Assembly: GCA_965240325.2 (NCBI GenBank)
Contig: OZ251229.1
Coordinates: forward strand, 1,860,001-1,924,000
DNA from: Rebecca billardiae RCC1528
Lineage: Eukaryota; Protista; Haptophyta
Direction of reading: 5' to 3'
Length of the DNA: 64,000 nt
Shown here: piece after piece, positions 3,591 to 41,571 of the stretch
Numbering within the stretch: position 1 is the first letter of the stretch
Layout: the number at the start of each line of letters is the position of its first letter
The notes under the pieces: model-generated
What the model was told of the DNA's origin: nothing
The model's input: only the letters and a program-made list of their open reading frames with translations
The model's database searches: none
Translations under genes and position numbers: made by a program

Positions 3591-3937
3591 CAATGCCAGC
3601 GCGGTGCATGGCACACAGGTCCGTCGCATGGGCACGCACAGCAAGCATCATCCGGGCCGAGCAGCACGCACGCATGCGTGGGCGCAGTGCCGCGCCTCGT
3701 TCACCAAATTATTGGTGGCACGGTGGATCCGACGACGCGGGGTTGGGTTTCGTCCTGATGCGCGCAGTAAATGTGGCAGGAATAACGATGAATGTGCGCG
3801 AAGCTCGTTGCGTTACGACGAAACTAGTCAGCTGGCGACGATGGCGGCGCCGCGATCGCCACGGAGGTGTACGCGAGTCTCGACACGCACGAGCAGCACG
3901 ATGTCGCGCCTAGCGCGGCAGGCAGCTGCTCACACGC

Positions 3938-9800: not shown

Positions 9801-12133
9801 GGCTTGCAAACCAAGCCCCCCAAAACGGGATGGCGAGCACTGGGCGACGCGAGGGCCCGCCTGCGCAGCGCTCCCAAGGCCGCATGCGGGCGTGACAGCC
9901 GTGCGCGAGCACTTTGTGGGGGCTAGAAGACCCGTAGGCAGCAATCGTGCCGCCTCGTCGACGCCCTCGCCGCCCTCTCCGCGCGCAGAGACCTGCCGGA
10001 TGGCAAGCGCAGTTCTGGAGAAGGCCTGTCCGGCGAGCGTGATGGGCACGCGTGCGCCCCTGGGGCATTCAAAGGTCGGCTTTTTCGCTTCTGCGAGATG
10101 GGTATGGGTGTACTCAGCATCACTGCTTCGCCGGCCGCCATGCCGACATCGATCAGACCGCACACGCGCGCGCGACAGCTGGCAGGCCAACATCCGGTTG
10201 AAATGGCGGCGCGCGTGATCACAAGGCTGTCGGCGAGGAGACCGCAGTGCGAGCCAAAGGAGGGCGCGCAAGACATGCATCTCGGTCGTGAGGCGTGCAT
10301 GAGCCGCGAGCACGGGCACGACGTGCACGGCAAAGCCCGTCATGCGCCTCGACGCGCACGCGCCGCGGCGGACGACCGAGGAGGGCGCGCGCAGGCTGGC
10401 CTTCTTGGCGGCGGCTGTCCGGGAGTGCCCGCGCACGCGCAACGCGTATTTCAAGAGCTCCCGGAAGGCATCGACTCCTAAGGGACGGTGCCTTTCGCCG
10501 CGCGAGGGGTTTTTCCGCGGGGGGGGCACGTCCGTTTCGACGGGACGGCCGCCCCCGCGGCTTTGCGTAGCATCAAGGAGAGTCCGGAAAATGGAATCCG
10601 GGGACGCTCTTCAACTCGCGGGGGGCCCTGTTTGACGGCCGCGCCGAGCACCCGAGCGTCTCGACCCGCGCCTCGTGTGTCACCTCGCATTTGGCGGGGC
10701 GCGCGCGGAGCGCGCCGCGAGTGGGCGCGTCGGCCCGTACGCTCGGAGCCCCGGGGGACTTTCGCCCGAGCGCGCCGCGCCGCGCCCGTCGCGCCGCGCT
10801 GCGTCGTGCGCCGTGCACACGTTCGGCTCGGCTCGGGTGCCGAGCGCCGTCGACGAGCGGGAAGAGCTCCAGGGGCGGGTGCGCTGGCGCGGGCGGGGTG
10901 TGGAGGCACGATGTGGGAGTCTACCTCTCGTACCGGGCGCGCGCGCCCGCTCGGCGCCGTCGCTTCGCGCGGCCGTAGGCGTCCAAGCGTCGATGGTTTG
11001 GCCTCGAGAACCGCTAGAAGGGGGGCTGCCTGCCGCAAGCGACGCGGGTAACGATTGACGAGACCGAGCACGCATCTGACGAGACCGAATACGCACCAGG
11101 CGGCACGCGCAACGGCCCAGCACATTGAACATGGAGGCTCGATGGCCGCGCGCCGCGCGCTCATCAGGCGGGGCGCGCGCACGGAGTCCGCCGCGCGTGG
11201 GGGCCTCAGGCCCCCGGGAGAAGCAAGCGCGGCATCGCCGCGCCGTGCCCGCGCCACGGCATACGTCCAACGACCCAGGTGCGACCGCGCACGCTGCGCG
11301 CTATGCGGCACTCTGGGGCGGATGGTCATGGTGCGCGCGCCGCGCGCGGGGGCTGCATGTGGAGGCGGGCGGTGGTTGTCCGGCTCGCTCGCCGCGCGCG
11401 CGCGTCGCCCTGCGTTACGCTATGAACTCTTTGTGCGCGCACGGTGCGGATGCTGCACGAGTAAGCCACGGTGCTTAGTGTCACGGTCTTGGTCCGCACT
11501 CACTCCACTGTCTCGCCGCGCCAGCACGTTGCGGCTGCAGCAGCCGCAGCTCACGGGACCAATGATGCCAGGTGTCAAATCTGAATCGGCAGGGAAGCGG
11601 AAGGAGCGCGCCACCTAGCGTGCGGCTCGTGCTGGAGGGCGGCCCGGTCGGACGCACTACTCTGTACAGACGCCCGTTACGGCCGTGCTGGTGAGGGGGC
11701 CGTAGGTGGTCAGGTGCCGTGACCACTCAGTCACAGGTCTGGCCAGGCTTCAGCGCCGCACGATGACCCCGGCTGGTCGTCATCGGCCGTGCTGGTGAGG
11801 CGGGCCGTACGGGTGGTCAGGTGCAGTGACCACTCAGTCACTGCCAGTCACAGGTCTGGCCAGGCTTCACTCGCCTTCAGCGCCGCACGATGACCCCGGC
11901 TGGTCGTCACTCAGTCTCCTCAACAGATGCCCGGTCGGCTAAGTTGGTCTAAATGGTCACCGTCACCGTGTCGGTTTCAGACAGTGAGTTGTGAGAGTGG
12001 TAGCCAGTCAGTCTGCCACTTGCCACCGTAGTGCCAGCAAGGGTGCCAGTCACCGGTGAGGATATCGTTTGCGTAGCACGGCCGGGGCCGCGGATCTTTT
12101 TCCTCGAGTTATGGGGGGCTTGGTTTGCAAGCC
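9801..12133. mobile_element. Nested non-autonomous TIR element, PIF/Harbinger-like, 3-bp TSD TGA
   Basis: TIR GGCTTGCAAACCAAGCCCCCCA at 9801-9822 and its reverse complement at 12112-12133. TGA at 9798-9800 and 12134-12136. Removing the element restores the outer arm. Confidence 0.88.
11681..11909. repeat. Imperfect ~105-125-bp tandem duplication inside the nested element
   Basis: GGCCGTGCTGGTGAG...GTCACAGGTCTGGCCAGGCTTCA...GCGCCGCACGATGACCCCGGCTGGTCGTCA occurs twice. Confidence 0.85.
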
Positions 12134-22326: not shown

Positions 22327-22645
22327 TCAGCTTCGGCGCCCCCCAAACTCGTCGAAGTACTGGCACCCCGCCTCGCCGTAGTTCGATGCGCGCCCTCTGC
22401 ATTCTTCAGCCATCTCGCCATGGTTGCGGGCGCAGCGCTTGCACCTGCGAGTTTGGCGCTGGCCTTTGTCTCCCTGCCGTTCACGAGAGCGCTTGCCGCG
22501 CGGCGGCGCCTGCGGAGCGACCGGGATGCCGATCAGCGTGCCCGCCACAGTCATCATCGGCAGCGGCGCGTGCGTGGTGAGGACAGCAGGTGGCGTGGGC
22601 ATCGTAGGCTGCTCATTCATGCGCGGCCAAACGAAACCGCCGTGC

Positions 22646-22713
<68 letters not shown>

Positions 22714-25700
22714 CGGCGGCGGCGACGGCGGCAGCTGAGGCGATGGCGGCTGCTGCTCGTCAGGTGCGCTCGAAACTGCTGCAGCAGCGGGCGTTCCGCC
22801 TTGCGGCAGCGTGGGAAGCGCTGATGGCGTGGTTCGCGCGTTCAGCGCGGTCAAGTGCGCAGCAGCACGCTTCACTGACGAGACGGCCTCGCGCACGCGC
22901 TGGTTGCGCAGCCACGCACTGTGGTACGTGCGCAGGTAAACCGGCAGCTTGGGAAAGATGGTGATGCCGTCCACCGACGCGCACCACGTGATGGCCATGG
23001 CGTCGTAGTCGATCTTCCCGGGCTGCGCGAGGGCGAGGCTCATGAACAGCTTCTTCTCGGCCTCGCCGTACACCGGGAGCAGCGGCAGCGTCGTGCCCAT
23101 CGCCTCGCAGAGATAGAGCTGGTCCCTGGTGAGCGTGGGCTGCCTGTCGAGCGCGATGGCGCTGATCGCCAGCGCCAGCTCGGGCGTGTGCAGCGCAACC
23201 GTGCCAAAGCGCTCAGCAGTCGGTCGGAAGTCGCTGGCGTTCACCCACTCGGGGTAGAGCAGCACGCCGTGATTGTGCTCCACGAGCAGCTGCAGCGCGT
23301 CGATCATCCACGTGTCGACATGGCCGATACGCGGGAAGCCGAAGCGGCGCAGCTCAGACACAGAGTGAGTGTGCCGGTGACGGAACTCGGCGAGGACTGC
23401 ATCAGCCAGACGCACGCCCACAAGCCAGCCCAGGAAGTTGTGCTTGAGGCCCTTATGCGAGTTCTCCGTCATGTTGGTGCCTCTCGAGCAGAGAAGGAGC
23501 GGGATGCCGTGCGTGTCGAAGGCGGGCTCGCCCTTGGCATCGAGCTGCTGCATGTAGAAGGACACGCCTGGTGGATCTGACGCGTGGCCGGCGATGATCT
23601 CGAGCAGCACATTGTTCGCACGCTTCCACGCCTCCTCGTTGAAGAGTGCAGCGCCCGACTCGGGGTCGATCCGCGGGCCGTAGAGCAAGAAGACGGCTCG
23701 CACGCGCCAATAGAGCGTGCTCGGAGGCAGCACAGCTCGGCGGACTCGCTTTCGGAAGTAGTCCGGGTTGTAGTACATCATCGCCTCAATCACCTCCTCC
23801 TCCTTGCCGTCCGCACGCAGGCTTGCCTTGACCCTGGCGAGCTCGGCGGGATGCCACGTGAGGAACGCCTCGCGGAACGCGACAAAATACGCCTTTTTGG
23901 AGGAATGGTTGATCGGCACCTTGGGCCGGTCCATGAAGTGGAATGGATCTCCGAGCACGCTCGAGAAGCTGTCGGCAATGCTGCTCGGCGGCTCGGCGAG
24001 AGGGCTTGCCGGCTGAGGCTGCCTCGCGCGCTCACTGCCGGCGCTCGCGCAGGCTTGGATGTCCGCGATCTCATTAGCGGTCAGCTCGACGCCGGTCCAC
24101 TCCTCGCCACCATCGAGATCGTCTGCGAGCGCGCCGTGGTGCAAACGGCCCGCGCCATCGTCGTCACCGGCAGTAGGCGTGTCTGCGATGGGATCCAGAG
24201 ACATCGGCGCCGTCGCGCCTGCCGCACCGGCATCTGGCAATGCCGAAGTCCCCGCGCCGGATGCGTCTTCGGCCAGCCGCGCGCCGCCCGCGGGCTGCTC
24301 GATCACAGCGCGGTGCTCCTTAAGCATCGTGAACGGCAGCACGATCTCGAAGGGTGGCGGGCCAAAGTCGCCGAGAGCAGCGCGATCTGCGCCATGCTTG
24401 ACGCCAGGCACGACGAGCGAAGCCGCCTTCACCGACGTGACCCGCACGCGCGCTCGGCTGCCCGTGCTGCGCATCGACTGCGGAGTGAAGCCGGCTGGCA
24501 GCCGCCATACTCCGCCGTCCAGAAGTATGCCAACTCCGGCGGCTGGAGCAGCCAGATCGACGATGGCGCCGTGCGACGGCACGATGTCGACGACGAGGTT
24601 CGTCGCCGCGGCGGCGGGCGAGAGGCGCAAAGTGAGATCGGGGAGTTTCACCAAATGGAAGAAGACCTCGAGCCCCTTGATCACGTCGAGCGCCGCGTAC
24701 TCCACCTGCTTGGTCGAAAGCTGCTCGGTCGACCACCTCGACGAGCAGCGCACGGTCGGGTCCTTGTCGAGCTGCTCGTCCAGCACCAGCTCGACGAGGC
24801 GCTCGAGGCTGGCCGTGGGCGTTCGGATGACGCCACGCCTCGCGGCCATCGGCGCCAGCTCGACGATGCGCTCCCTGCTCACCACATCCGAGTTCCAGCT
24901 GAAGTCCTTGCCAATCTTCTTGAAGTCTGCTGCGATGCAGCTCCCGACGAAGGTGAGCGCGGGGTCTGCGAAGAGGGCGGTGAGCCGGTCAGGAAGGCGC
25001 GTGAGGCCGCGCAGCTGCACAACGAGCGCCTTGATCGGGCCGTGCTCGTCGTCGCAGTAGCTCAGCTGGATCACTGCGACTGGGCCTTGGTCGACGCCGC
25101 CGTGTCCATCCCGGGTCACGTTCCACTCCGCGTCGAGGCTGAGGAATCGGCATGACGCCGGCAGCCCGTTGACGACGCTGCGGAGCGCGTCCACCTTGGT
25201 GTTGATCACGCGCGCGCCGCGAGCGACCACGTATCGCGATGACTCCACAGAGCACGTGGGCCGCTGCTCGAGTGCGTCGTGGGCCGGAGTTGCCCTGTCC
25301 AGCTCAGCCTGCGACTCCCGCAGCGACGGCATCGTGGCCAGGAAGAAGGGCTTGTCGTCCGCCGGCTTGTCGGTGAAGAGCAGATGCGGCAGCGGCTGGC
25401 CGTAGGCGGTCATCGTCTCCTGCAGCGCGTTGAGAGCACCGTTCATCTGGTCGTGCCCGTCAGTCACGATGTGGAACTGCACCCTGATCTCGCCGAGCTC
25501 GTTGGTGCCAGTGACAAGTGCGCGAAAGATTTGCTCACCGTGGTACGTGGCGAGGCGCTTGGCCTCCTGGTAGGACACGTCCCAGTGCAGCGTCGTCGCC
25601 CCGCGCTTCTTCATCTCGCAGTCCAAAAAGTCGCGCATCCTCGAGACGTACTTGATGTACACCTCGCCGAGGTAGGCGCCAGACGGCACCGAGCCGGCGT

Positions 25701-28700
25701 ACTTGTCCTTGTCCGCAAAGGTGGAGAACATGCCGGTAGGTGTCCCCGCAGGCACGAAGGGCTGGGCTCGGTCTCGGGCGAGGCGACGTTCGCGAGCAAG
25801 CTGAGCGCGGGTGTGACACTTCGACTGCAGCTCGAGCAGCATCTTCGAGATGGTGTTCGGCCGTACGCCCGCAAAGCTGAGCAGCGGCCTCATGATGTCC
25901 ACGACGAGCAGGTCGACGCCGCCGCGGTGCGTGAGGAAGGCAGGGAACGTCTCGCCGAAGCCGTGCGGCAGCAAGGGCACGGAGTCCTCGTCGTAGCCCA
26001 TGAAGGTGTACGCAGTGCGCTCACGGGTGCCGTCGTCAACGGGCTCGTCAACGGTCATGCCGCGCGCCTCGGCGGCGCGCTTTGCATCCGTCGCCTCACG
26101 CATGCAGTCGTGGCACTTGTACCGCCGGCTGATGATGTAGTAGTCGCGGGTGAGCCCGGTGATGCGGCGGCCGAAGTGGTTCGTGCGCCAGCCGTGCGCG
26201 CCCACACACTTCGAAGAGCGATGCCGTGGGCAAGGTGGCATGCCAAGGTGCTCACCAAACTGGATGTCGGGGAGCCAAACCTTCACGTCGCAGTAGTACT
26301 CGACCTCGTCGCAGGGCAGGCCAAGCTTCTTGCACAACGCAGGCGCGCTCCTCGCGCGCAGCCAGAAAGCCTCCGACTCCGGGATAGGCTCCGCGCTGAG
26401 CAGCCGAATCAACCACCGGTCGACGACGGGGCCGTGCGTGCTGGACTCGATCTGGAGCCGGTTGGAGATCGCCTTGAGGTAGGGCTCCATGACACCGCCG
26501 GCGGAAGCGACAGGCTCCTCCAAGCCCTCGTCTGTCTCCTCGGGCTCCGTGGTGACATCAGGTGGCTGGAACGTGGGGCGTGCGCCCGTCGTCGGTGCGG
26601 CTCTCGCCGCGCCCGCCGCGTCCACGCCCGCCACCGCCGCTGCTCTGATCGGGCTCGCCGCCTCCTCCGCCGCCGCCGCCGCCGCCAATCCGCGCGCACC
26701 GCCCGCACCGCGAGCCGCCGCCGCTGCCGCCGCTGGTGACACCGCGCCCGCCGCGCCGCCGCCCGGGGCTGCTGCGGATCTCGCCGCGTCAGTCGCGCCA
26801 TCGCTCGCCGACGGCGCGGCTCTCGCCGCGCCCGTCGCGTCCCGCGCCACCGCCGCTGCTGCTCTGATCGAGCTCGCCGCCTCCTCCGCCGCCGCCGCCG
26901 CCGCCGCCAATCCGCGCGCACCGCCCGCACCGCGAGCCGCCGCCGCTGCCGCCGCTGGTGACACCGCGCCCGCCGCGCCGCCGCCCGGGGCTGCTGCGGA
27001 TCTCGCCGCGTCAGTCGCGCCATCGCTCGCCGACGGCGCGGCTCTCGCCGCGCCCGTCGCGTCCCGCGCCACCGCCGCTGCTGCTCTGATCGAGCTCGCC
27101 GCCTCCTCCGCCGCCGCCGCCGCCGCCGCCAATCCGCGCGCACCGCCCGCACCGCGAGCCGCCGCCGCTGCCGCCGCTGGTGACACCGCGCCCGCCGCGC
27201 CGCCGCCCGGGGCTGCTGCGGATCTCGCCGCGTCAGTCGCGCCATCGCTCGCCGACGGCGCGGCTCTCGCCGCGCCCGTCGCGTCCCGCGCCACCGCCGC
27301 TGCTGCTCTGATCGAGCTCGCCGCCTCCTCCGCCGCCGCCGCCGCCGCCGCCAATCCGCGCGCACCGTCCGCGCCGCGAGCCGCAGCTGCCGCCGCTCGT
27401 GACACCGCGCCCGCCGCGCCGTCGCCTGCGGCTGCTGCGGATCTCGCCGCGTCAGTCGCGCCATCGCTCGCCGACGGCGCGGCTCTCGCCGCGCCCGTCG
27501 CGTCCCGCGCCACCGCCGCTGCTGCTCTGATCGAGCTCGCCGCCTCCTCCGCCGCCGCCGCCGCCGCCGCCAATCCGCGCGCACCGCCCGCACCGCGAGC
27601 CGCCGCCGCTGCCGCCGCTGGTGACACCGCGCCCGCCGCGCCGCCGCCCGGGGCTGCTGCGGATCTCGCCGCGTCAGTCGCGCCATCGCTCGCCGACGGC
27701 GCGGCTCTCGCCGCGCCCGTCGCGTCCCGCGCCACCGCCGCTGCTGCTCTGATCGAGCTCGCCGCCTCCTCCGCCGCCGCCGCCGCCGCCGCCAATCCGC
27801 GCGCACCGTCCGCGCCGCGAGCCGCAGCTGCCGCCGCTCGTGACACCGCGCCCGCCGCGCCGTCGCCTGCGGCTGCTGCGGATCTCGCCGCGTCAGTCGC
27901 GCCATCGCTCGCCGACGGCGCGGCTCTCGCCGCGCCCGTCGCGTCCCGCGCCACCGCCGCTGCTGCTCTGATCGAGCTCGCCGCCTCCTCCGCCGCCGCC
28001 GCCGCCGCCGCCAATCCGCGCGCACCGTCCGCGCCGCGAGCCGCAGCTGCCGCCGCTCGTGACACCGCGCCCGCCGCGCCGTCGCCTGCGGCTGCTGCGG
28101 ATCTCGCCGCGTCAGTCGCGCCATCGCTCGCCGACGGCGCGGCTCTCGCCGCGCCCGTCGCGTCCCGCGCCACCGCCGCTGCTGCTCTGATCGAGCTCGC
28201 CGCCTCCTCCGCCGCCGCCGCCGCCGCCGCCAATCCGCGCGCACCGTCCGCGCCGCGAGCCGCAGCTGCCGCCGCTCGTGACACCGCGCCCGCCGCGCCG
28301 TCGCCTGCGGCTGCTGCGGATCTCGCCGCGTCAGTCGCGCCATCGCTCGCCGACGGCGCGGCTCTCGCCGCGCCCGTCGCGTCCCGCGCCACCGCCGCTG
28401 CTGCTCTGATCGAGCTCGCCGCCTCCTCCGCCGCCGCCGCCGCCGCCGCCAATCCGCGCGCACCGTCCGCGCCGCGAGCCGCAGCTGCCGCCGCTCGTGA
28501 CACCGCGCCCGCCGCGCCGTCGCCTGCGGCTGCTGCGGATCTCGCCGCGTCAGTCGCGCCATCGCTCGCCGACGGCGCGGCTCTCGCCGCGCCCGTCGCG
28601 TCCCGCGCCACCGCCGCTGCTGCTCTGATCGAGCTCGCCGCCTCCTCCGCCGCCGCCGCCGCCGCCGCCAATCCGCGCGCACCGTCCGCGCCGCGAGCCG

Positions 28701-29412
28701 CAGCTGCCGCCGCTCGTGACACCGCGCCCGCCGCGCCGTCGCCTGCGGCTGCTGCGGATCTCGCCGCACCCGCCGCGCCATCGCTCGCCGACGGCGCGGC
28801 TCTCGCCGCGCCCGTCGCGTCCCGCGCCACCGCCGCTGCTGCTCTGATCGAGCTCGCCGCCTCCTCCGCCGCCGCCGCCGCCGCCGCCAATCCGCGCGCA
28901 CCGTCCGCGCCGCGAGCCGCAGCTGCCGCCGCTCGTGACACCGCGCCCGCCGCGCCGTCGCCTGCGGCTGCTGCGGATCTCGCCGCACCCGCCGCGCCAT
29001 CGCCCGCAGCTGTTGCTCTGGCCGTGGCGTTGAAGCTGGAGGCATCCAGCTCCGCCTGCGGCCCATCGGCGGTGCGAGCGCCGCCTCTGCCACTGCGCTC
29101 CACATCTCTGCAGGCGCCGCTGCCAGCAGATGTGAGATCAGCTGCCCCCGTGTTAGCGGCAGCGCCGGAAGGTCTGCTGCCGTCAGAAGCGGCATGAATG
29201 GGCCGTGACGTTGGCTGGGTGCTCCCCGCGCCCCCAGCAGTCACCCTCGGCTGGAAAAAGGTATCTCGCGCCACCTTCCTCCTCGTCTCCGCCTCTGCAG
29301 CCTTGTTGGCGACCATCTCGTCCTTCTTGGTGGCTCGCGCGGCCACTGTATCGGCATCTAGATTGCTGCGTTTCCGCTGCGTCTTGTCCTTTGCGCCTTT
29401 TGTGCGTCCCAT
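22327..29412 (-). CDS. 2361-aa DDE transposase-like protein with embedded DEDDy 3'-5' exonuclease, Ala-rich repeats, poly-Q and C-terminal Cys cluster (copy 1)
   Basis: Candidate catalytic motifs HWDVSY, LFTDK, GDPFH (DxxH) and RGTNMTENSH. ExoI LSLDAEW, ExoII AADFKKI, ExoIII EYAALDV. Cys motifs CPRH..C..H..CHDC and CKRC..C..C. Confidence 0.85.
26580..29010. repeat. Coding minisatellite, 11 units of 219/222 bp (copy 1)
   Basis: AATCCGCGCGCACC recurs at 26687, 26909, 27131, 27353, 27572, 27794, 28013, 28232, 28451, 28670 and 28889. Confidence 0.95.
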
Positions 29413-30614
29413 TTTGCCGCGGAGAGGTGCTCAATTGGGCCGGTTCTGCACGCGACGGGCATGGCCACGGGCATGGCGCAGAGGGCGAAAGCAGATGAGC
29501 CTACTGAAGCGCAAGCTCTGCTGGGCACGCAACGCGAGCTGTGGAGGTTGCGGCACACTTACACCCGCAACATACCGCGTGGGGATGAGCGGCTAAGGTC
29601 TCAGAACGGCCGGGCGATGGGTCGATGGAGCCGGGGCATGAAATGATGCGGCCTTGCTGCTTTGCAACCGAGGCGGCCCGTTAGTCGCCTGATCTCGGCC
29701 CTCGCGAGATCACCTCACTTGTCATCTCATTGGCTGAGCCAAAAGATAGCAGTCTGAAGTCCTATGTGAGCCAAAAGATAGCCCAATAAGTAAAAGTCCT
29801 GCCCAAGCCCTTCCGGACAGCCAAAAGAGTCCACCAGCATGCCCTAGTAGCCGCTCACCGGCAAATTGTCCATGCTGGTGGAGTTATTATAAACTCGCGC
29901 CGAAAAAAGGGGAGAGGAGGAAAAGGGGGAAGGAGGAGGGAAGAAGAAGGAGAAAAAAAGGAAAGAAAGAGGAGGGAGAGGAGGGAGAGGAGGGAGAGGA
30001 GGGGCTCTACTCCGGAGCTCTGCTCCTGGACCGGACCCGCTCTCGGTGACGGCCTAATAGGGGGCGCGCCGCCGGATAAAGCGATCTGCGACGAAAGGCT
30101 CAGGCGGCTCATCAATTGGAAGAATTGGGGCGGCCGCCCAATGCAGCCTCGCCGAAGTGGTCATCGTAAATTTGGTCGTCGTAACACACACATTGCTATG
30201 CCTATGGCTATGGGCCTTTCAACTTCAGAGAGTTGAGGCGCGGACCAATCGGCTTCGAGCCACTGAGGTTTCGTCGCAGATCGATTTATTACAGAGTATC
30301 GTCTATGTATCGGACCGCCAGCAACGACAGGCCCGATTCGTCACAGGACACCGACGATACGGCGCGACAGCAGCTGTTCAAGCTGTACATGAATTTCATC
30401 AGACGACTACTGCCAGACACTGACAGTACTTCCTTTTGACCCCGCGGCCCGCGCCCCTGGCAGCGCAGAGTCTACATCAACTATTATATATATATATATA
30501 TATGTGTGGCGTTATAGCCGCCTGGAATCTATGACTGAGTGTCTATGAGCGACGCCAAGAATCCGGCTCGCATGGCACTTCCAGCGTTGTCCCGCGCGCA
30601 GGCAGCAGCGCTAC

Positions 30615-30654
<40 letters not shown>

Positions 30655-30875
30655 TTATATATATTATTACTACTTTATTAATAAACCATCGCATATATTC
30701 ATATTGATAAGATACTAGCGAGTCGTCCCCGAGCCGTCCACCAGCTCAGCGTCACGAACTGCTCATATCATGCGTGCCGCAGCCCTCACTACAGCGCTCC
30801 CCAATCCTCGTCGCCGCCGCCACCGCGACGAGTTGGGGTCTCTCGAGCCGAGCGCTGCCAGATACGCACGGCCCG

Positions 30876-31194
30876 TCAGCTTCGGCGCCCCCCAAACTCG
30901 TCGAAGTACTGGCACCCCGCCTCGCCGTAGTTCGATGCGCGCCCTCTGCATTCTTCAGCCATCTCGCCATGGTTGCGGGCGCAGCGCTTGCACCTGCGAG
31001 TTTGGCGCTGGCCTTTGTCTCCCTGCCGTTCACGAGAGCGCTTGCCGCGCGGCGGCGCCTGCGGAGCGACCGGGATGCCGATCAGCGTGCCCGCCACAGT
31101 CATCATCGGCAGCGGCGCGTGCGTGGTGAGGACAGCAGGTGGCGTGGGCATCGTAGGCTGCTCATTCATGCGCGGCCAAACGAAACCGCCGTGC

Positions 31195-31262
<68 letters not shown>

Positions 31263-34200
31263 CGGCGGCGGCGACGGCGGCAGCTGAGGCGATGGCGGCT
31301 GCTGCTCGTCAGGTGCGCTCGAAACTGCTGCAGCAGCGGGCGTTCCGCCTTGCGGCAGCGTGGGAAGCGCTGATGGCGTGGTTCGCGCGTTCAGCGCGGT
31401 CAAGTGCGCAGCAGCACGCTTCACTGACGAGACGGCCTCGCGCACGCGCTGGTTGCGCAGCCACGCACTGTGGTACGTGCGCAGGTAAACCGGCAGCTTG
31501 GGAAAGATGGTGATGCCGTCCACCGACGCGCACCACGTGATGGCCATGGCGTCGTAGTCGATCTTCCCGGGCTGCGCGAGGGCGAGGCTCATGAACAGCT
31601 TCTTCTCGGCCTCGCCGTACACCGGGAGCAGCGGCAGCGTCGTGCCCATCGCCTCGCAGAGATAGAGCTGGTCCCTGGTGAGCGTGGGCTGCCTGTCGAG
31701 CGCGATGGCGCTGATCGCCAGCGCCAGCTCGGGCGTGTGCAGCGCAACCGTGCCAAAGCGCTCAGCAGTCGGTCGGAAGTCGCTGGCGTTCACCCACTCG
31801 GGGTAGAGCAGCACGCCGTGATTGTGCTCCACGAGCAGCTGCAGCGCGTCGATCATCCACGTGTCGACATGGCCGATACGCGGGAAGCCGAAGCGGCGCA
31901 GCTCAGACACAGAGTGAGTGTGCCGGTGACGGAACTCGGCGAGGACTGCATCAGCCAGACGCACGCCCACAAGCCAGCCCAGGAAGTTGTGCTTGAGGCC
32001 CTTATGCGAGTTCTCCGTCATGTTGGTGCCTCTCGAGCAGAGAAGGAGCGGGATGCCGTGCGTGTCGAAGGCGGGCTCGCCCTTGGCATCGAGCTGCTGC
32101 ATGTAGAAGGACACGCCTGGTGGATCTGACGCGTGGCCGGCGATGATCTCGAGCAGCACATTGTTCGCACGCTTCCACGCCTCCTCGTTGAAGAGTGCAG
32201 CGCCCGACTCGGGGTCGATCCGCGGGCCGTAGAGCAAGAAGACGGCTCGCACGCGCCAATAGAGCGTGCTCGGAGGCAGCACAGCTCGGCGGACTCGCTT
32301 TCGGAAGTAGTCCGGGTTGTAGTACATCATCGCCTCAATCACCTCCTCCTCCTTGCCGTCCGCACGCAGGCTTGCCTTGACCCTGGCGAGCTCGGCGGGA
32401 TGCCACGTGAGGAACGCCTCGCGGAACGCGACAAAATACGCCTTTTTGGAGGAATGGTTGATCGGCACCTTGGGCCGGTCCATGAAGTGGAATGGATCTC
32501 CGAGCACGCTCGAGAAGCTGTCGGCAATGCTGCTCGGCGGCTCGGCGAGAGGGCTTGCCGGCTGAGGCTGCCTCGCGCGCTCACTGCCGGCGCTCGCGCA
32601 GGCTTGGATGTCCGCGATCTCATTAGCGGTCAGCTCGACGCCGGTCCACTCCTCGCCACCATCGAGATCGTCTGCGAGCGCGCCGTGGTGCAAACGGCCC
32701 GCGCCATCGTCGTCACCGGCAGTAGGCGTGTCTGCGATGGGATCCAGAGACATCGGCGCCGTCGCGCCTGCCGCACCGGCATCTGGCAATGCCGAAGTCC
32801 CCGCGCCGGATGCGTCTTCGGCCAGCCGCGCGCCGCCCGCGGGCTGCTCGATCACAGCGCGGTGCTCCTTAAGCATCGTGAACGGCAGCACGATCTCGAA
32901 GGGTGGCGGGCCAAAGTCGCCGAGAGCAGCGCGATCTGCGCCATGCTTGACGCCAGGCACGACGAGCGAAGCCGCCTTCACCGACGTGACCCGCACGCGC
33001 GCTCGGCTGCCCGTGCTGCGCATCGACTGCGGAGTGAAGCCGGCTGGCAGCCGCCATACTCCGCCGTCCAGAAGTATGCCAACTCCGGCGGCTGGAGCAG
33101 CCAGATCGACGATGGCGCCGTGCGACGGCACGATGTCGACGACGAGGTTCGTCGCCGCGGCGGCGGGCGAGAGGCGCAAAGTGAGATCGGGGAGTTTCAC
33201 CAAATGGAAGAAGACCTCGAGCCCCTTGATCACGTCGAGCGCCGCGTACTCCACCTGCTTGGTCGAAAGCTGCTCGGTCGACCACCTCGACGAGCAGCGC
33301 ACGGTCGGGTCCTTGTCGAGCTGCTCGTCCAGCACCAGCTCGACGAGGCGCTCGAGGCTGGCCGTGGGCGTTCGGATGACGCCACGCCTCGCGGCCATCG
33401 GCGCCAGCTCGACGATGCGCTCCCTGCTCACCACATCCGAGTTCCAGCTGAAGTCCTTGCCAATCTTCTTGAAGTCTGCTGCGATGCAGCTCCCGACGAA
33501 GGTGAGCGCGGGGTCTGCGAAGAGGGCGGTGAGCCGGTCAGGAAGGCGCGTGAGGCCGCGCAGCTGCACAACGAGCGCCTTGATCGGGCCGTGCTCGTCG
33601 TCGCAGTAGCTCAGCTGGATCACTGCGACTGGGCCTTGGTCGACGCCGCCGTGTCCATCCCGGGTCACGTTCCACTCCGCGTCGAGGCTGAGGAATCGGC
33701 ATGACGCCGGCAGCCCGTTGACGACGCTGCGGAGCGCGTCCACCTTGGTGTTGATCACGCGCGCGCCGCGAGCGACCACGTATCGCGATGACTCCACAGA
33801 GCACGTGGGCCGCTGCTCGAGTGCGTCGTGGGCCGGAGTTGCCCTGTCCAGCTCAGCCTGCGACTCCCGCAGCGACGGCATCGTGGCCAGGAAGAAGGGC
33901 TTGTCGTCCGCCGGCTTGTCGGTGAAGAGCAGATGCGGCAGCGGCTGGCCGTAGGCGGTCATCGTCTCCTGCAGCGCGTTGAGAGCACCGTTCATCTGGT
34001 CGTGCCCGTCAGTCACGATGTGGAACTGCACCCTGATCTCGCCGAGCTCGTTGGTGCCAGTGACAAGTGCGCGAAAGATTTGCTCACCGTGGTACGTGGC
34101 GAGGCGCTTGGCCTCCTGGTAGGACACGTCCCAGTGCAGCGTCGTCGCCCCGCGCTTCTTCATCTCGCAGTCCAAAAAGTCGCGCATCCTCGAGACGTAC

Positions 34201-37200
34201 TTGATGTACACCTCGCCGAGGTAGGCGCCAGACGGCACCGAGCCGGCGTACTTGTCCTTGTCCGCAAAGGTGGAGAACATGCCGGTAGGTGTCCCCGCAG
34301 GCACGAAGGGCTGGGCTCGGTCTCGGGCGAGGCGACGTTCGCGAGCAAGCTGAGCGCGGGTGTGACACTTCGACTGCAGCTCGAGCAGCATCTTCGAGAT
34401 GGTGTTCGGCCGTACGCCCGCAAAGCTGAGCAGCGGCCTCATGATGTCCACGACGAGCAGGTCGACGCCGCCGCGGTGCGTGAGGAAGGCAGGGAACGTC
34501 TCGCCGAAGCCGTGCGGCAGCAAGGGCACGGAGTCCTCGTCGTAGCCCATGAAGGTGTACGCAGTGCGCTCACGGGTGCCGTCGTCAACGGGCTCGTCAA
34601 CGGTCATGCCGCGCGCCTCGGCGGCGCGCTTTGCATCCGTCGCCTCACGCATGCAGTCGTGGCACTTGTACCGCCGGCTGATGATGTAGTAGTCGCGGGT
34701 GAGCCCGGTGATGCGGCGGCCGAAGTGGTTCGTGCGCCAGCCGTGCGCGCCCACACACTTCGAAGAGCGATGCCGTGGGCAAGGTGGCATGCCAAGGTGC
34801 TCACCAAACTGGATGTCGGGGAGCCAAACCTTCACGTCGCAGTAGTACTCGACCTCGTCGCAGGGCAGGCCAAGCTTCTTGCACAACGCAGGCGCGCTCC
34901 TCGCGCGCAGCCAGAAAGCCTCCGACTCCGGGATAGGCTCCGCGCTGAGCAGCCGAATCAACCACCGGTCGACGACGGGGCCGTGCGTGCTGGACTCGAT
35001 CTGGAGCCGGTTGGAGATCGCCTTGAGGTAGGGCTCCATGACACCGCCGGCGGAAGCGACAGGCTCCTCCAAGCCCTCGTCTGTCTCCTCGGGCTCCGTG
35101 GTGACATCAGGTGGCTGGAACGTGGGGCGTGCGCCCGTCGTCGGTGCGGCTCTCGCCGCGCCCGCCGCGTCCACGCCCGCCACCGCCGCTGCTCTGATCG
35201 GGCTCGCCGCCTCCTCCGCCGCCGCCGCCGCCGCCAATCCGCGCGCACCGCCCGCACCGCGAGCCGCCGCCGCTGCCGCCGCTGGTGACACCGCGCCCGC
35301 CGCGCCGCCGCCCGGGGCTGCTGCGGATCTCGCCGCGTCAGTCGCGCCATCGCTCGCCGACGGCGCGGCTCTCGCCGCGCCCGTCGCGTCCCGCGCCACC
35401 GCCGCTGCTGCTCTGATCGAGCTCGCCGCCTCCTCCGCCGCCGCCGCCGCCGCCGCCAATCCGCGCGCACCGCCCGCACCGCGAGCCGCCGCCGCTGCCG
35501 CCGCTGGTGACACCGCGCCCGCCGCGCCGCCGCCCGGGGCTGCTGCGGATCTCGCCGCGTCAGTCGCGCCATCGCTCGCCGACGGCGCGGCTCTCGCCGC
35601 GCCCGTCGCGTCCCGCGCCACCGCCGCTGCTGCTCTGATCGAGCTCGCCGCCTCCTCCGCCGCCGCCGCCGCCGCCGCCAATCCGCGCGCACCGCCCGCA
35701 CCGCGAGCCGCCGCCGCTGCCGCCGCTGGTGACACCGCGCCCGCCGCGCCGCCGCCCGGGGCTGCTGCGGATCTCGCCGCGTCAGTCGCGCCATCGCTCG
35801 CCGACGGCGCGGCTCTCGCCGCGCCCGTCGCGTCCCGCGCCACCGCCGCTGCTGCTCTGATCGAGCTCGCCGCCTCCTCCGCCGCCGCCGCCGCCGCCGC
35901 CAATCCGCGCGCACCGTCCGCGCCGCGAGCCGCAGCTGCCGCCGCTCGTGACACCGCGCCCGCCGCGCCGTCGCCTGCGGCTGCTGCGGATCTCGCCGCG
36001 TCAGTCGCGCCATCGCTCGCCGACGGCGCGGCTCTCGCCGCGCCCGTCGCGTCCCGCGCCACCGCCGCTGCTGCTCTGATCGAGCTCGCCGCCTCCTCCG
36101 CCGCCGCCGCCGCCGCCGCCAATCCGCGCGCACCGCCCGCACCGCGAGCCGCCGCCGCTGCCGCCGCTGGTGACACCGCGCCCGCCGCGCCGCCGCCCGG
36201 GGCTGCTGCGGATCTCGCCGCGTCAGTCGCGCCATCGCTCGCCGACGGCGCGGCTCTCGCCGCGCCCGTCGCGTCCCGCGCCACCGCCGCTGCTGCTCTG
36301 ATCGAGCTCGCCGCCTCCTCCGCCGCCGCCGCCGCCGCCGCCAATCCGCGCGCACCGTCCGCGCCGCGAGCCGCAGCTGCCGCCGCTCGTGACACCGCGC
36401 CCGCCGCGCCGTCGCCTGCGGCTGCTGCGGATCTCGCCGCGTCAGTCGCGCCATCGCTCGCCGACGGCGCGGCTCTCGCCGCGCCCGTCGCGTCCCGCGC
36501 CACCGCCGCTGCTGCTCTGATCGAGCTCGCCGCCTCCTCCGCCGCCGCCGCCGCCGCCGCCAATCCGCGCGCACCGTCCGCGCCGCGAGCCGCAGCTGCC
36601 GCCGCTCGTGACACCGCGCCCGCCGCGCCGTCGCCTGCGGCTGCTGCGGATCTCGCCGCGTCAGTCGCGCCATCGCTCGCCGACGGCGCGGCTCTCGCCG
36701 CGCCCGTCGCGTCCCGCGCCACCGCCGCTGCTGCTCTGATCGAGCTCGCCGCCTCCTCCGCCGCCGCCGCCGCCGCCGCCAATCCGCGCGCACCGTCCGC
36801 GCCGCGAGCCGCAGCTGCCGCCGCTCGTGACACCGCGCCCGCCGCGCCGTCGCCTGCGGCTGCTGCGGATCTCGCCGCGTCAGTCGCGCCATCGCTCGCC
36901 GACGGCGCGGCTCTCGCCGCGCCCGTCGCGTCCCGCGCCACCGCCGCTGCTGCTCTGATCGAGCTCGCCGCCTCCTCCGCCGCCGCCGCCGCCGCCGCCA
37001 ATCCGCGCGCACCGTCCGCGCCGCGAGCCGCAGCTGCCGCCGCTCGTGACACCGCGCCCGCCGCGCCGTCGCCTGCGGCTGCTGCGGATCTCGCCGCGTC
37101 AGTCGCGCCATCGCTCGCCGACGGCGCGGCTCTCGCCGCGCCCGTCGCGTCCCGCGCCACCGCCGCTGCTGCTCTGATCGAGCTCGCCGCCTCCTCCGCC

Positions 37201-37961
37201 GCCGCCGCCGCCGCCGCCAATCCGCGCGCACCGTCCGCGCCGCGAGCCGCAGCTGCCGCCGCTCGTGACACCGCGCCCGCCGCGCCGTCGCCTGCGGCTG
37301 CTGCGGATCTCGCCGCACCCGCCGCGCCATCGCTCGCCGACGGCGCGGCTCTCGCCGCGCCCGTCGCGTCCCGCGCCACCGCCGCTGCTGCTCTGATCGA
37401 GCTCGCCGCCTCCTCCGCCGCCGCCGCCGCCGCCGCCAATCCGCGCGCACCGTCCGCGCCGCGAGCCGCAGCTGCCGCCGCTCGTGACACCGCGCCCGCC
37501 GCGCCGTCGCCTGCGGCTGCTGCGGATCTCGCCGCACCCGCCGCGCCATCGCCCGCAGCTGTTGCTCTGGCCGTGGCGTTGAAGCTGGAGGCATCCAGCT
37601 CCGCCTGCGGCCCATCGGCGGTGCGAGCGCCGCCTCTGCCACTGCGCTCCACATCTCTGCAGGCGCCGCTGCCAGCAGATGTGAGATCAGCTGCCCCCGT
37701 GTTAGCGGCAGCGCCGGAAGGTCTGCTGCCGTCAGAAGCGGCATGAATGGGCCGTGACGTTGGCTGGGTGCTCCCCGCGCCCCCAGCAGTCACCCTCGGC
37801 TGGAAAAAGGTATCTCGCGCCACCTTCCTCCTCGTCTCCGCCTCTGCAGCCTTGTTGGCGACCATCTCGTCCTTCTTGGTGGCTCGCGCGGCCACTGTAT
37901 CGGCATCTAGATTGCTGCGTTTCCGCTGCGTCTTGTCCTTTGCGCCTTTTGTGCGTCCCAT
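30876..37961 (-). CDS. 2361-aa transposase-exonuclease protein (copy 2)
   Basis: Translation appears identical to 22327-29412. Confidence 0.85.
35129..37559. repeat. Coding minisatellite, 11 units of 219/222 bp (copy 2)
   Basis: Same array as copy 1, shifted by 8549. Confidence 0.95.
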
Positions 37962-38437
37962 TTTGCCGCGGAGAGGTGCTCAATTGGGCCGGTTCTGCAC
38001 GCGACGGGCATGGCCACGGGCATGGCGCAGAGGGCGAAAGCAGATGAGCCTACTGAAGCGCAAGCTCTGCTGGGCACGCAACGCGAGCTGTGGAGGTTGC
38101 GGCACACTTACACCCGCAACATACCGCGTGGGGATGAGCGGCTAAGGTCTCAGAACGGCCGGGCGATGGGTCGATGGAGCCGGGGCATGAAATGATGCGG
38201 CCTTGCTGCTTTGCAACCGAGGCGGCCCGTTAGTCGCCTGATCTCGGCCCTCGCGAGATCACCTCACTTGTCATCTCATTGGCTGAGCCAAAAGATAGCA
38301 GTCTGAAGTCCTATGTGAGCCAAAAGATAGCCCAATAAGTAAAAGTCCTGCCCAAGCCCTTCCGGACAGCCAAAAGAGTCCACCAGCATGCCCTAGTAGC
38401 CGCTCACCGGTGGCGGGTGGCTGTGTCTCGCCGCAGC

Positions 38438-40671: not shown

Positions 40672-41415
40672 TCATGACGGATGAGCGTCGCGGAAAGTGC
40701 GCGGAGCTCGATCGCGTGCGCGCCAATACCCTCGGCCGTAGTCGAGCACCAGCTGCGTGCCGCGTTCGATGCGCGCGCTGCGCGTGAGGATCGCGAGATG
40801 GTATGCTCCGTCGACGAAGACCGGGAAAAGGGCCACGTTGGCGCCGCCGTCATCTGCATGATTGAGAATACGCATTAGGCCGCCCATGTGCTGTGCAGAG
40901 ACACACAGCCCGTCGGCAGGGTATGCGCAGACGTAGTCGTCGGCGCGCCCGCCGTTGGGCACGCTCCGTTGCTCCTGCAGCAGGCCAACGTACTCGCCAA
41001 GCGGGGTGTGCGGATCGAGCGGTGCTGCGGCGAACAGCCCCAAACCTGCGCCGTCGACCTCGGCGACATAGATGTCGCCGCTGGGCTTCCGGCTGCGGAG
41101 GCGAGTGAGGACAGCGTCACGGTCAGCGCCATCGGGCAGGGCCTCGACAGCGTCTTGTGCAAACTGTCGGAGGGGTAGCTCGCGAAGCAGTGAGGTGGAT
41201 GCTGCAGTCAGTGCGCAGGACAGCTCGAATCCGTGACGCTCGGCAAATGCATCGCCCGGCAGCACGTGGTGACCACGCTCTCCTGGCGCCGCGCCAACGT
41301 GTACATGCGATTGGCCGAGAGAGCCGTCGTCTTCGAGCGCCACGCGTATTCGCCGCCCTAGCGCGTCCCACATCACACCCACGCCCGGCGCATCGAGGGC
41401 GGCGATTGCCGCCAT
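40672..41415 (-). CDS. SET-domain methyltransferase
   Basis: GLGLFA, LGEYVG, RILNHA and LVLDYGRGYW motifs. Confidence 0.88.
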   Translation of the reverse strand: MAAIAALDAPGVGVMWDALGRRIRVALEDDGSLGQSHVHVGAAPGERGHHVLPGDAFAERHGFELSCALTAASTSLLRELPLRQFAQDAVEALPDGADRDAVLTRLRSRKPSGDIYVAEVDGAGLGLFAAAPLDPHTPLGEYVGLLQEQRSVPNGGRADDYVCAYPADGLCVSAQHMGGLMRILNHADDGGANVALFPVFVDGAYHLAILTRSARIERGTQLVLDYGRGYWRARDRAPRTFRDAHPS

Positions 41416-41571
41416 CGGGATGAGCGGGCGGCCGGTCCGGTGGGCAGTCGTCGGTGCAGGCTGCCGAGAGTCTGTGATGTCCGGGCGGGTCGATCTTCCG
41501 GCGTGGCTGCTCGAGTGCTCGGTGCTCACGCCCGCCGCACCACGCCTGCCGTCTGAGCGGGCGTCGAGACG

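What the first reader, a model, noticed from the sequence alone, without database searches (positions are those of the whole stretch)
22327..29412. Giant Mutator-like transposase with an intact WRN-type 3'-5' exonuclease inside its DDE core
Seen: one intronless 2361-aa ORF inside an element with TIRs and an 8-bp TSD. Motif order is basic N-terminus (GRTKGAKDKTQRKR), repeat array, Cys/His module, D (HWDVSY ~25580), D (FTDK ~25370), then DEDDy ExoI/II/III (DAEW, AADF, YAALD; ~25140-24680), then DxxH (GDPFH ~23945), E (RGTNMTENSH ~23465), poly-Q and a Cys cluster. Established: D-D-(C/D)xxH-E is the Mutator/hAT/P-type signature and DEDDy is the DnaQ/WRN exonuclease signature. Inference: an apparently autonomous, recently active transposon whose transposase has its own end-processing or RNA-trimming nuclease. 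From memory it resembles uncharacterised fungal DUF6729-type proteins; here the ends and TSD are delimitable, which defines the element.
Basis: partly seen in the sequence, partly recalled or inferred. Interest (0 to 1): 0.9.

Follow-up and report, generated by a model that had tools for sequence, protein, structure and literature searches.

The report
Dada transposon dimer with built-in exonuclease
This is an intact head-to-tail pair of Dada-type jumping genes; the cutting enzyme carries its own DNA-trimming exonuclease, a layout already published in 2013, so it is a well-delimited new member of a known kind and not a new invention.

Summary
The element has short imperfect inverted ends and an 8-bp direct repeat.

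The reading is only partly new. Kojima and Jurka (2013, PMC3706591) described this layout for the Dada superfamily. It has D, D, then a DEDDy 3'-5' exonuclease, then DxxH and E, with an N-terminal CCCC and a C-terminal Cys/His finger. They reported it in Laccaria and Ectocarpus. The window protein matches published Dada-1_LB motif for motif.

Structure prediction adds support. The exonuclease superposes on WRN exonuclease (Z 24.4). The two halves on either side of it together match the IS256-family transposase ISCth4 (Z 11.9; Z 14.4 in a natural exonuclease-less relative).

New details:
- The element is a tandem dimer (21311-29852 and 29861-38401).
- The end signature GGC-N11-GCTGGTGG is shared with three distant relatives.
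- The target is not a small-RNA gene. The dimer lies about 90 bp upstream of an NRAMP gene.
- A marine relative shows head-to-tail junctions with 6-bp spacers.

The same scan had already noted the dimer (s1-358058).

The parts
21288..21296 (-). Copy of the subterminal 9-mer GCTGGTGGA in the host flank. It ends exactly 14 nt before the element's left terminus, the same distance as in a true element end.
   Evidence: Only 0.56 occurrences are expected in the whole window.
21303..21310 (.). Left target-site duplication GCTCACCG
21311..29852 (-). Dada element copy 1 (8542 bp)
   Evidence: End signature shared with relatives.
21311..21333 (+). Terminus downstream of the ORF: GGC-N11-GCTGGTGGA
22327..29412 (-). 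2361-aa Dada transposase ORF, no introns
22366..22443 (-). C-terminal Cys/His cluster (aa 2324-2349), conserved in relatives
22831..23415 (-). Conserved C-terminal helical region (aa 2000-2194)
23434..23958 (-). Second half of the RNase H-like core (aa 1819-1993): strand 5, D1822xxH1825, helical insertion domain, and the helix carrying E1983
24091..24306 (-). Disordered acidic linker (aa 1703-1774)
   Evidence: pLDDT below 50
24316..24594 (-). Small beta-barrel domain after the exonuclease (aa 1607-1699), weakly Tudor/KOW/PWWP-like
   Evidence: In the relative's model Z is 5-6.7.
24628..25266 (-). DEDDy 3'-5' exonuclease domain (aa 1383-1595) with D1427, E1429, D1496, Y1572, D1576
   Evidence: WRN exonuclease TM 0.84-0.89; 2e6l Z 24.4, rmsd 2.2, 186 aligned.
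25291..25593 (-). First half of the RNase H-like core (aa 1274-1374): strands 1-4 and helices, with D1278 and D1348
26104..26232 (-). N-terminal CCCC zinc module (C1061, C1069, C1100, C1103), inside the region that Pfam calls DUF6729 in relatives
26593..29007 (-). 11.0 copies of a 219-nt unit encoding a lineage-specific Ala-rich 73-aa repeat array
   Evidence: Relatives are about 1450-1550 aa without it.
29830..29852 (-). Terminus upstream of the ORF: GGC-N11-GCTGGTGGA on the minus strand
29853..29860 (.). Spacer GCTCACC(G) between the two copies. It is 7 bp if copy 2 keeps its GGC terminus, or 8 bp if that terminus has lost one G.
29861..38401 (-). Dada element copy 2, identical to copy 1 apart from the one-base difference at the junction; ORF 30876..37961
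38402..38409 (.). Right target-site duplication GCTCACCG

Best explanation
The stretch is an autonomous DNA transposon of the Dada superfamily, from the branch whose transposase carries a built-in DEDDy 3'-5' exonuclease. It is present as a head-to-tail dimer inserted about 90 bp upstream of an NRAMP transporter gene.

The protein has these parts, in order:
- a basic N-terminus
- a lineage-specific Ala-rich repeat array
- a CCCC zinc and helical DNA-binding region (Pfam DUF6729)
- an RNase H-like DDE core of the IS256/Mutator type (D1278, D1348, D1822xxH1825, E1983)
- a conserved helical tail ending in a Cys/His finger

The exonuclease, a small beta-barrel and a disordered linker are inserted into the core between the helices that follow strand 4 and strand 5.

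Inferred mechanism, not shown here:
- The N-terminal region binds the conserved subterminal GCTGGTGG motif, 14 nt from each GGC terminus.
- The DDE site cuts there and joins the 3' ends into a target with a 7-8 bp stagger.
- The tethered exonuclease trims 3' ends or flaps made at the donor or target, as Kojima and Jurka proposed.
- The dimer most likely arose by a second insertion into the duplicated target beside a resident copy. This behaviour is published for Dada-U1. Here it is plausibly favoured by an end-like motif that remains in the left flank.
For: Family:
- The published description of Dada matches point for point: the DDE triad, DxxH after the second D, an N-terminal CCCC finger, a C-terminal CCHC finger, and a DEDDy exonuclease between the second D and DxxH in Dada-1/2_LB and Dada-1_ES. 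It also reports subterminal rather than terminal inverted repeats and tandem insertions.
- Ten motifs of Dada-1_LB from the paper's Dataset S1 occur in the same order in the window protein. They occur in closer form in Agaricales proteins that the window protein hits at about E 1e-70.
- Homologues with DUF6729 plus PF01612, about 1450-1550 aa, are 35-48% identical over 95% of the core. The representative library holds 3926 clusters at E<=1e-3 and 611 at E<=1e-30.

Fold:
- The AlphaFold model of aa 1000-2199 has pLDDT 86 and pTM 0.69.
- The exonuclease matches WRN exonuclease at Z 24.4.
- ISCth4 transposase matches at Z 11.9, rmsd 3.4, 269 residues, over model residues 169-1026. That range spans both sides of the exonuclease.
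- In the natural exonuclease-less relative P0022, ISCth4 is the top hit (Z 14.4). Rows 2-20 and most of the next dozen are DDE integrases or transposases aligned over roughly residues 128-735. That span runs from strand 1 to the helix carrying E.

Mobility:
- The signature GGC-N11-GCTGGTGG ... CCACCAGC-N11-GCC is present at both ends of the window element and of the element in L001, which has a 7-8 bp duplication.
- A marine relative carries it at its left end and at the right ends abutting it in three head-to-tail junctions. That element has at least 9 different left flanks from different samples.
- It is also at the 3' end of a Skeletonema element that has two different flanks.
Against: - No other copy or empty site in this genome could be examined. 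No sequencing run was listed, and the earlier-findings index holds no look-alike. Recent activity is therefore inferred from two identical copies that may share a single duplication event.
- The only difference between the copies is one G in a G-run at the junction, which may be an assembly error.
- The target is not a tRNA, snRNA or 5S gene, and the duplication is 8 bp. The published Dada value is 6-7 bp.
- No direct computed alignment to a Repbase Dada sequence was possible. The link rests on motifs read from the paper's dataset and on transitive homology.
- No atomic coordinates were available, so the convergence of D, D and E is inferred from superpositions, not measured.
- Nothing here tests the role of the exonuclease.
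Confidence: 0.88

Rival explanations
1. The element moves like its closest structural relative, the IS256 family, by copy-out/paste-in. One end attacks the flank of the other end, giving a circle or a tandem dimer in which the right and left ends are joined through a few flank bases. That junction is the active intermediate. The chromosomal dimer here and the head-to-tail junctions of relatives would be traces of that pathway, not repeated insertions.
For: - ISCth4 is by far the best non-exonuclease fold match.
- ISCth4 and IS256 give 8-bp duplications and junction spacers of 5-8 bp, with 6 bp the most efficient.
- The window has an 8-bp duplication and a 7-8 bp junction spacer. The observed junction reads exactly as right terminus, then 7 nt of right flank, then an intact GGC left terminus.
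- A marine relative shows three different head-to-tail junctions, each with a 6-bp spacer, among 12 distinct left junctions.
Against: - Fold similarity does not fix the pathway. Eukaryotic Mutator shares the fold and is cut-and-paste.
- The 7-versus-8 difference is one G in a homopolymer.
- The marine duplication length is unknown, so its 6-bp spacers may simply be shared duplications.
- Published Dada tandems were explained by target specificity.
- No circular DNA was observed.
Confidence: 0.15
2. The exonuclease does not process transposon DNA ends. It acts on RNA, for example by trimming or destroying host small RNAs that would silence the element, as its fold relatives Mut-7, Nibbler, EXD1 and RICE act on small RNAs.
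For: - Fold matches include the Nibbler EXO domain (Z 19.2), RNase D (18.6), EXD1 (15.8) and RRP6, and RICE1 by Foldseek.
- The five catalytic residues are invariant in 47 sequences, so some activity is under selection.
Against: - The best match is the DNA exonuclease of WRN (Z 24.4, 28% identity).
- The domain is spliced into the DDE core itself, not appended, which suggests coupling to the DNA reaction. This is an inference.
- Nothing here distinguishes between substrates.
Confidence: 0.12
3. It is a Mutator-like element (MULE) proper that captured a host WRN-type exonuclease.
For: - The motif order is D-D-(C/D)xxH-E.
- The closest solved fold belongs to the IS256 family, the bacterial relatives of MULEs.
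Against: - No MULE Pfam family appears even at E<=10.
- Profiles of both core halves find no transposase by sequence.
- The ends are 23 nt, not long TIRs.
- The whole architecture, including both zinc modules, is that of Dada, which its authors set apart as its own superfamily.
Confidence: 0.05
4. It is not mobile. It is a host or domesticated gene that was duplicated in tandem through a 9-bp microhomology, or an assembly duplication.
For: - The pattern repeat-unit-repeat-unit-repeat is also what a microhomology-mediated tandem duplication produces.
- No other copy could be checked in this genome.
- A domesticated Dada is known in carps.
Against: - The unit ends exactly at a terminal signature shared with three distant elements elsewhere. 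Two of those have several different flanks.
- The inverted ends are in exact register.
Confidence: 0.04

Closest known systems
Dada superfamily DNA transposons, exonuclease-bearing families Dada-1_LB, Dada-2_LB (Laccaria bicolor) and Dada-1_ES (Ectocarpus); Kojima and Jurka 2013, PMC3706591
   Same: - The DDE triad, with DxxH after the second D.
- A DEDDy exonuclease between the second D and DxxH.
- An N-terminal CCCC module and a C-terminal Cys/His module.
- Short subterminal inverted repeats in place of long TIRs.
- A copy of the subterminal repeat in the target at the same distance.
- Tandem copies separated by the duplication.
- Colinear sequence motifs.

   Different: - The target is not a multicopy small-RNA gene.
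- The duplication is 8 bp, against the published 6-7 bp.
- There are no introns.
- An Ala-rich repeat array of about 800 aa sits at the N-terminus.
- The nearest protein found is only 46-48% identical.
- The termini of the exonuclease-bearing families were not defined in the paper; here they are.
IS256-family transposase ISCth4 (PDB 6XG8), copy-out/paste-in; PMC7780238
   Same: - An RNase H-like core with a helical insertion domain carrying C/DxxH.
- D-to-D spacing of 66 residues, against 70 here.
- An 8-bp duplication.
- End-to-end junctions with 6-8 bp spacers.
- The best non-exonuclease fold match (Z 11.9 and 14.4, 269 residues).

   Different: - Bacterial, about 400 aa, with no exonuclease, beta-barrel or zinc modules.
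- No detectable sequence similarity.
- The transposition pathway of Dada is unknown.
Mutator/MULE transposases (MuDR)
   Same: - The D-D-CxxH-E signature.
- The same deep clan as IS256.
   Different: - No MULE Pfam match.
- MULEs have long TIRs and mostly 9-11 bp duplications (from established knowledge).
- MULEs have no exonuclease.
WRN exonuclease and other DEDDy DnaQ-like nucleases (Pfam PF01612)
   Same: - The fold (2e6l: Z 24.4, rmsd 2.2 A, 186 of 186 residues, 28% identity).
- All of ExoI, ExoII and ExoIII, with the Y-x3-D form.

   Different: Here the domain is an insertion inside another enzyme's catalytic fold. Its substrate is unknown.

Membership tests
Dada superfamily | DDE triad with a DxxH motif after the second D | tested here: met
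   D1278, D1348, D1822xxH1825 and E1983 are invariant or at least 90% conserved in 47 sequences. The secondary-structure order fits an RNase H fold.
Dada superfamily | N-terminal CCCC zinc finger and C-terminal CCHC-type finger | tested here: met
   The N-terminal module is C1061-x7-C1069 ... C1100-x2-C1103. The C-terminal module is C2324-x2-C2327-x3-H2331-x6-C2338-x10-C2349. Both are conserved in the consensus.
Dada superfamily | Sequence homology to published Dada transposases | tested here: met
   Ten Dada-1_LB motifs from Dataset S1 are colinear in the window protein. Agaricales relatives that carry near-identical Dada-1_LB motifs are hit at about E 1e-70. No direct full-length alignment to a Repbase entry was run.
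Dada superfamily | In the Laccaria and Ectocarpus branch: a DEDDy exonuclease between the second D and DxxH | tested here: met
Dada superfamily | No long TIRs; short subterminal inverted repeats at equal distance from the duplication | tested here: met
   The 12-nt perfect core CATGCTGGTGGA sits 11 nt in from each terminus.
Dada superfamily | Target-site duplication of 6-7 bp | tested here: inconclusive
   The outer repeats are 8 bp and the inner spacer is 7-8 bp. The L001 relative has 7 bp, or 8 with one mismatch. The marine junction spacers are 6 bp.
Dada superfamily | Insertion into multicopy small-RNA genes. The paper reports this for all families with defined termini, but not for the Dada-1_xx families. 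| tested here: not met
   No tRNA and no Rfam family anywhere in the window or in the rebuilt empty site. No tRNA in the marine loci. The target is the upstream region of an NRAMP gene.
Mutator/MULE | MULE transposase domain detectable by sequence | tested here: not met
   No MULE family in Pfam at E<=10. Profiles of both core halves hit no transposase in the PDB.
Mutator/MULE | Long TIRs and 9-11 bp duplication | tested here: not met
   Imperfect 23-nt ends and an 8-bp repeat.
IS256 family | RNase H-like core with a helical insertion domain carrying C/DxxH (fold level) | tested here: met
   6xg8_A gives Z 11.9 for the window model and Z 14.4 for the P0022 model, with 269 residues aligned in each.
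IS256 family | Copy-out/paste-in with circular or dimer junction intermediates | not testable with these tools
   Only indirect traces were seen: head-to-tail junctions with 6-8 bp spacers.
DEDDy 3'-5' exonuclease (PF01612) | Pfam score above the gathering threshold, ExoI/II/III residues, and the fold | tested here: met
   25.8 and 30.4 bits against 23.6. D, E, D, Y and D are invariant. WRN exonuclease matches at Z 24.4.

The most novel reading that the evidence does not exclude
The exonuclease-bearing Dada elements may transpose like IS256. One end would be transferred to the flank of the other end, giving circles or tandem dimers whose right and left ends are joined by a 6-8 bp spacer. The built-in 3'-5' exonuclease would process that junction or the uncut strand. 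This would be the first eukaryotic DDE transposon family shown to use a copy-out/paste-in type of route. It would also explain why head-to-tail junctions recur in this window, in a marine relative (3 of 12 left junctions) and in zebrafish Dada-U1.
Probability: 0.15. Interest if true: 0.75.

Novelty: new member of a known kind. Interest (0 to 1): 0.35.

Why it matters
The headline feature, an exonuclease inside a DDE core, is not new, so the finding should not be counted as a discovery. It does have practical value in four ways.
- It ties the unannotated Pfam family DUF6729, and thousands of 'hypothetical 3'-5' exonuclease' proteins of algae, diatoms, haptophytes and fungi, to Dada transposases. 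No paper in the library mentions DUF6729.
- It gives the first delimited ends for the exonuclease-bearing branch, a signature conserved between transposases only about 40-48% identical. With it such elements can be found and bounded in any genome.
- It shows a Dada lineage that does not target small-RNA genes.
- The predicted fold places Dada next to IS256. Together with the recurring head-to-tail junctions, this makes the question of how Dada moves, and what the exonuclease is for, directly testable.

Tried and rejected
- Sequencing runs: none was listed for the left junction stretch. Copy number, the dimer junction and expression could therefore not be checked with reads, and read laying was not used.
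- Earlier-findings look-ups by sequence and by several words gave no other copy in this genome.
- Literature search for 'DUF6729' found no paper.
- Novosib, which also gives 8-bp duplications in green algae, was considered from memory. It was dropped once the Dada paper matched.
- Exact short motifs of the window protein were not found in the Dada Dataset S1 by text search, because of divergence and line wrapping. Reading the Dada-1_LB entry and fuzzy motif matching solved this.
- A plain k-mer scan for inverted repeats around the L001 gene gave only chance pairs. The signature search found that element's ends later.
- The metagenome scan for the marine right end gave one true junction (L013). 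The two other hits lie in what look like unrelated coding sequences and were set aside without further check.
- Contigs for P0003 and P0041 do not reach the element ends.
- HMM profiles of the two core halves against PDB sequences found no transposase. A weak MOZART1-like hit (E 0.17) was treated as chance.
- Foldseek on the full model returned only exonucleases. The transposase fold appeared only with the exhaustive aligner and in the exonuclease-less relative.
- A tyrosine-recombinase or Crypton-like reading of the tandem array was considered. It was dropped because nothing but the DDE and exonuclease folds was found.
- A bacterial promoter scan of the upstream region is irrelevant for a eukaryote.


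Full report
OBSERVATION

The window holds a 2361-codon frame at 22327..29412 on the minus strand and an identical one at 30876..37961. Self-comparison shows two tandem units with a period of 8549 bp, 99.99% identical, differing by one base.

Read at base level, the layout is:
- left duplication GCTCACCG, 21303-21310
- copy 1, 21311-29852
- GCTCACC(G), 29853-29860
- copy 2, 29861-38401
- right duplication GCTCACCG, 38402-38409

The single difference is one G in a G-run at the inner junction. The inner spacer is therefore 7 bp with an intact GGC terminus, or 8 bp with a terminus one base short. A homopolymer assembly error cannot be excluded.

The two ends are GGCAAATTGTCCATGCTGGTGGA and, in reverse complement, GGCTACTAGGGCATGCTGGTGGA. 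They are 19 of 23 identical, with a perfect 12-nt core in exact register. The 9-mer GCTGGTGGA occurs seven times in the window against 0.56 expected. Four occurrences are the subterminal sites of the two copies, two are one internal site per copy, and one is in the left flank.

RELATIVES

The core (aa about 950-2200) finds proteins of about 1450-1550 aa that are 35-48% identical over 95% of its length. They carry DUF6729 and the PF01612 exonuclease and come from Cymbomonas, Skeletonema, a pavlovophyte and many marine metagenome contigs. An exhaustive search counts 3926 representative clusters at E<=1e-3 and 611 at E<=1e-30. The more distant full-length hits are Agaricales and other fungal proteins. 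Nothing closer than 46-48% was found.

In a 47-sequence alignment, the second D, all five DEDDy residues and one later histidine are invariant. The first D, DxxH and E are at least 90% conserved. The Ala-rich array (11.0 units of 219 nt) is absent from relatives and accounts for the 'giant' size.

WHAT IS KNOWN

Kojima and Jurka (2013, PMC3706591) defined the Dada superfamily by several features:
- a DDE triad with a DxxH after the second D
- an N-terminal CCCC finger and a C-terminal CCHC finger
- a copy of that repeat in the target

[quoted passage not shown] They suggest that it processes cleaved 3' ends. They show tandem Dada-U1 copies separated by the duplication.

The Dada-1_LB entry in their Dataset S1 is visibly homologous to the window protein along its whole core. 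Ten of its motifs are found in the same order in the window protein. They occur in near-identical form in the Agaricales hits. The window protein also has both cysteine modules.

The finding is therefore a Dada transposase of the exonuclease-bearing branch. DUF6729, which scores above threshold in relatives and which no paper in the library mentions, is the zinc and helical region in front of the Dada catalytic core.

FOLD

An AlphaFold model of aa 1000-2199, built on the 47-sequence alignment, has mean pLDDT 86 and pTM 0.69. In protein numbering, the secondary-structure order is:
- strand 1 with D1278
- strands 2 and 3, then a helix
- strand 4, followed by D1348, then two helices
- the exonuclease (aa 1383-1595)
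- a small beta-barrel (aa 1607-1699)
- a disordered linker
- strand 5, followed at once by D1822xxH1825
- a mostly helical insertion domain
- a helix carrying E1983

This is the RNase H-like topology of the hAT, Mutator and IS256 group, with the extra domains placed between the helices after strand 4 and strand 5.

Foldseek and the exhaustive aligner put WRN exonuclease first (TM 0.84-0.89; Z 24.4, rmsd 2.2 A, 186 of 186 residues, 28% identity). Among the exonuclease hits, the IS256-family transposase ISCth4 (6xg8) appears at Z 11.9 with 269 residues aligned over model residues 169-1026. That range spans both sides of the insertion.

To remove the masking, I folded a natural relative that lacks the exonuclease (P0022, residues 280-1060). 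There ISCth4 is the top hit (Z 14.4, 269 residues). Nearly all the higher rows below it are retroviral integrases, Hermes, Tn5, P element, piggyBac, Mu, Mos1 and Transib, at Z 6-8. They are aligned from strand 1 to the E helix.

I had no coordinates with which to measure distances. By sequence alone, neither half of the core finds any solved transposase. This agrees with the published remark that only HHpred sees the link.

MOBILITY AND ENDS

Reads and other parts of this genome were not available, so I tested the ends on relatives.

A marine element is identical over 6142 bp in contigs from many samples. It starts at the same base in every contig with a flank, with at least nine different left flanks. 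Its left end is GGC-N11-GCTGGTGGA. In three contigs the sequence to the left is the element's own right end, CCACCAGC-N11-GCC. It is followed by a 6-bp spacer that differs each time: AGAAAG, TTTGAA and GCTTTT.

The element around P0012 (L001, 9707-15759) has the same signature at both ends and the duplication AATCAGT. A Skeletonema element has an exact CCACCAGC-N11-GCC 3' end with two different flanks.

A terminal signature conserved between transposases only about 40-48% identical is strong evidence that these are true transposon ends and that GCTGGTGG is the binding site.

TARGET

No tRNA or Rfam family is present in the window, in the rebuilt empty site or in the marine loci. The left flank is an NRAMP transporter gene on the minus strand (357 bits), whose ATG is about 90 bp from the insertion. 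The nearest gene identified on the right, about 2.3 kb away, encodes a SET-domain protein.

This lineage therefore does not share the small-RNA-gene targeting that made Dada known. That targeting was never shown for the exonuclease-bearing families.

One detail recalls the published Dada-U6 and Dada-U1 observation. The left flank carries a perfect copy of the subterminal 9-mer in right-end orientation. It ends exactly 14 nt before the junction, the same distance as in a real end. By the shuffle rate this is about a 1-in-1000 event, even allowing some tens of positions around the junctions. The flanks of the relatives do not show it.

THE DIMER

Three accounts remain.

(a) A second insertion into the duplicated target beside a resident copy, as proposed for Dada-U1. 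The end-like motif in the flank lies wholly outside the duplication and survives insertion, so the site could be hit twice. I rate this the most likely.

(b) An IS256-like reaction. In ISCth4 and IS256, one end is joined to the flank of the other, giving right-left junctions with 5-8 bp spacers and 8-bp duplications. The window junction reads exactly as right end, then 7 nt of right flank, then an intact left end, and the marine junctions have 6-bp spacers. This is the most novel reading not excluded, at about 0.15.

(c) Unequal exchange or slippage at the duplication, or an assembly artefact.

VERDICT

The sequence facts are confirmed and the DDE-plus-exonuclease reading is right. The architecture was published in 2013, and the element belongs to Dada, not to Mutator proper. 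It is a new, well-delimited member.

Modest new points:
- conserved ends
- a target that is not a small-RNA gene
- an IS256-like predicted fold, with the insertion mapped onto it
- recurring head-to-tail junctions

The same scan had already noted the dimer on this stretch (s1-358058). Notes elsewhere in this genome describe 'piggyBac or THAP plus DnaQ/WRN exonuclease' fusions. They may be further, decayed Dada copies, but I could not check them.

Noticed in passing
window 21288-21296 (and a one-mismatch copy at 21270-21278): The host flank carries a perfect copy of the element's subterminal 9-mer in right-end orientation. It ends exactly 14 nt before the left terminus, so the flank plus the duplication mimics an element end. 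This recalls the target copies of the subterminal repeat reported for Dada-U6 and Dada-U1.
   Followed up: partly
L006:1-52, L007:1-120, L013:1-60: A marine relative (48% identical over the aligned 39% of the core) shows three different head-to-tail junctions, right end then 6 bp then left end, with spacers AGAAAG, TTTGAA and GCTTTT. They are 3 of 12 distinct left junctions. They could be tandem copies or circular forms.
   Followed up: partly
window 24316-24594 (aa 1607-1699): A small beta-barrel domain follows the exonuclease and is conserved in relatives. It gives weak fold matches to Tudor, KOW and PWWP barrels (Z 5-6.7 in the P0022 model).
   Followed up: partly
protein P0022 (JGI metagenome): This natural relative has the exonuclease cleanly missing, while the beta-barrel and both core halves remain. 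It is either a deletion derivative or a gene-model artefact.
   Followed up: partly
window 19364-21292 (-) and 40675-42600 (-): An intronless NRAMP metal transporter gene (Pfam 357 bits) lies immediately beside the dimer, which sits about 90 bp upstream of its ATG. A SET-domain gene lies about 2.3 kb to the other side. The 17-kb insertion may separate NRAMP from its promoter.
   Followed up: partly
window 12132-14393: A large near-perfect palindrome: 709-nt arms (12420-13128 and 13399-14107, 98%) nested within 305-nt arms (12132-12436 and 14089-14393).
   Followed up: no
window 2129-5482: A block of nested direct repeats, with 268-nt units repeated in tandem and units about 620 nt apart at 96-100% identity.
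   Followed up: no
window 49894-55530 (+): An 1878-aa open frame in a region of about 80% G+C. It was not examined.
   Followed up: no
other pieces of the same genome (notes s1-336793, s1-350747, s1-343857): First-stage notes describe 'piggyBac' or 'THAP' fused to DnaQ/WRN-type exonucleases with non-TTAA ends. These could be further or decayed Dada copies that were misread.
   Followed up: no
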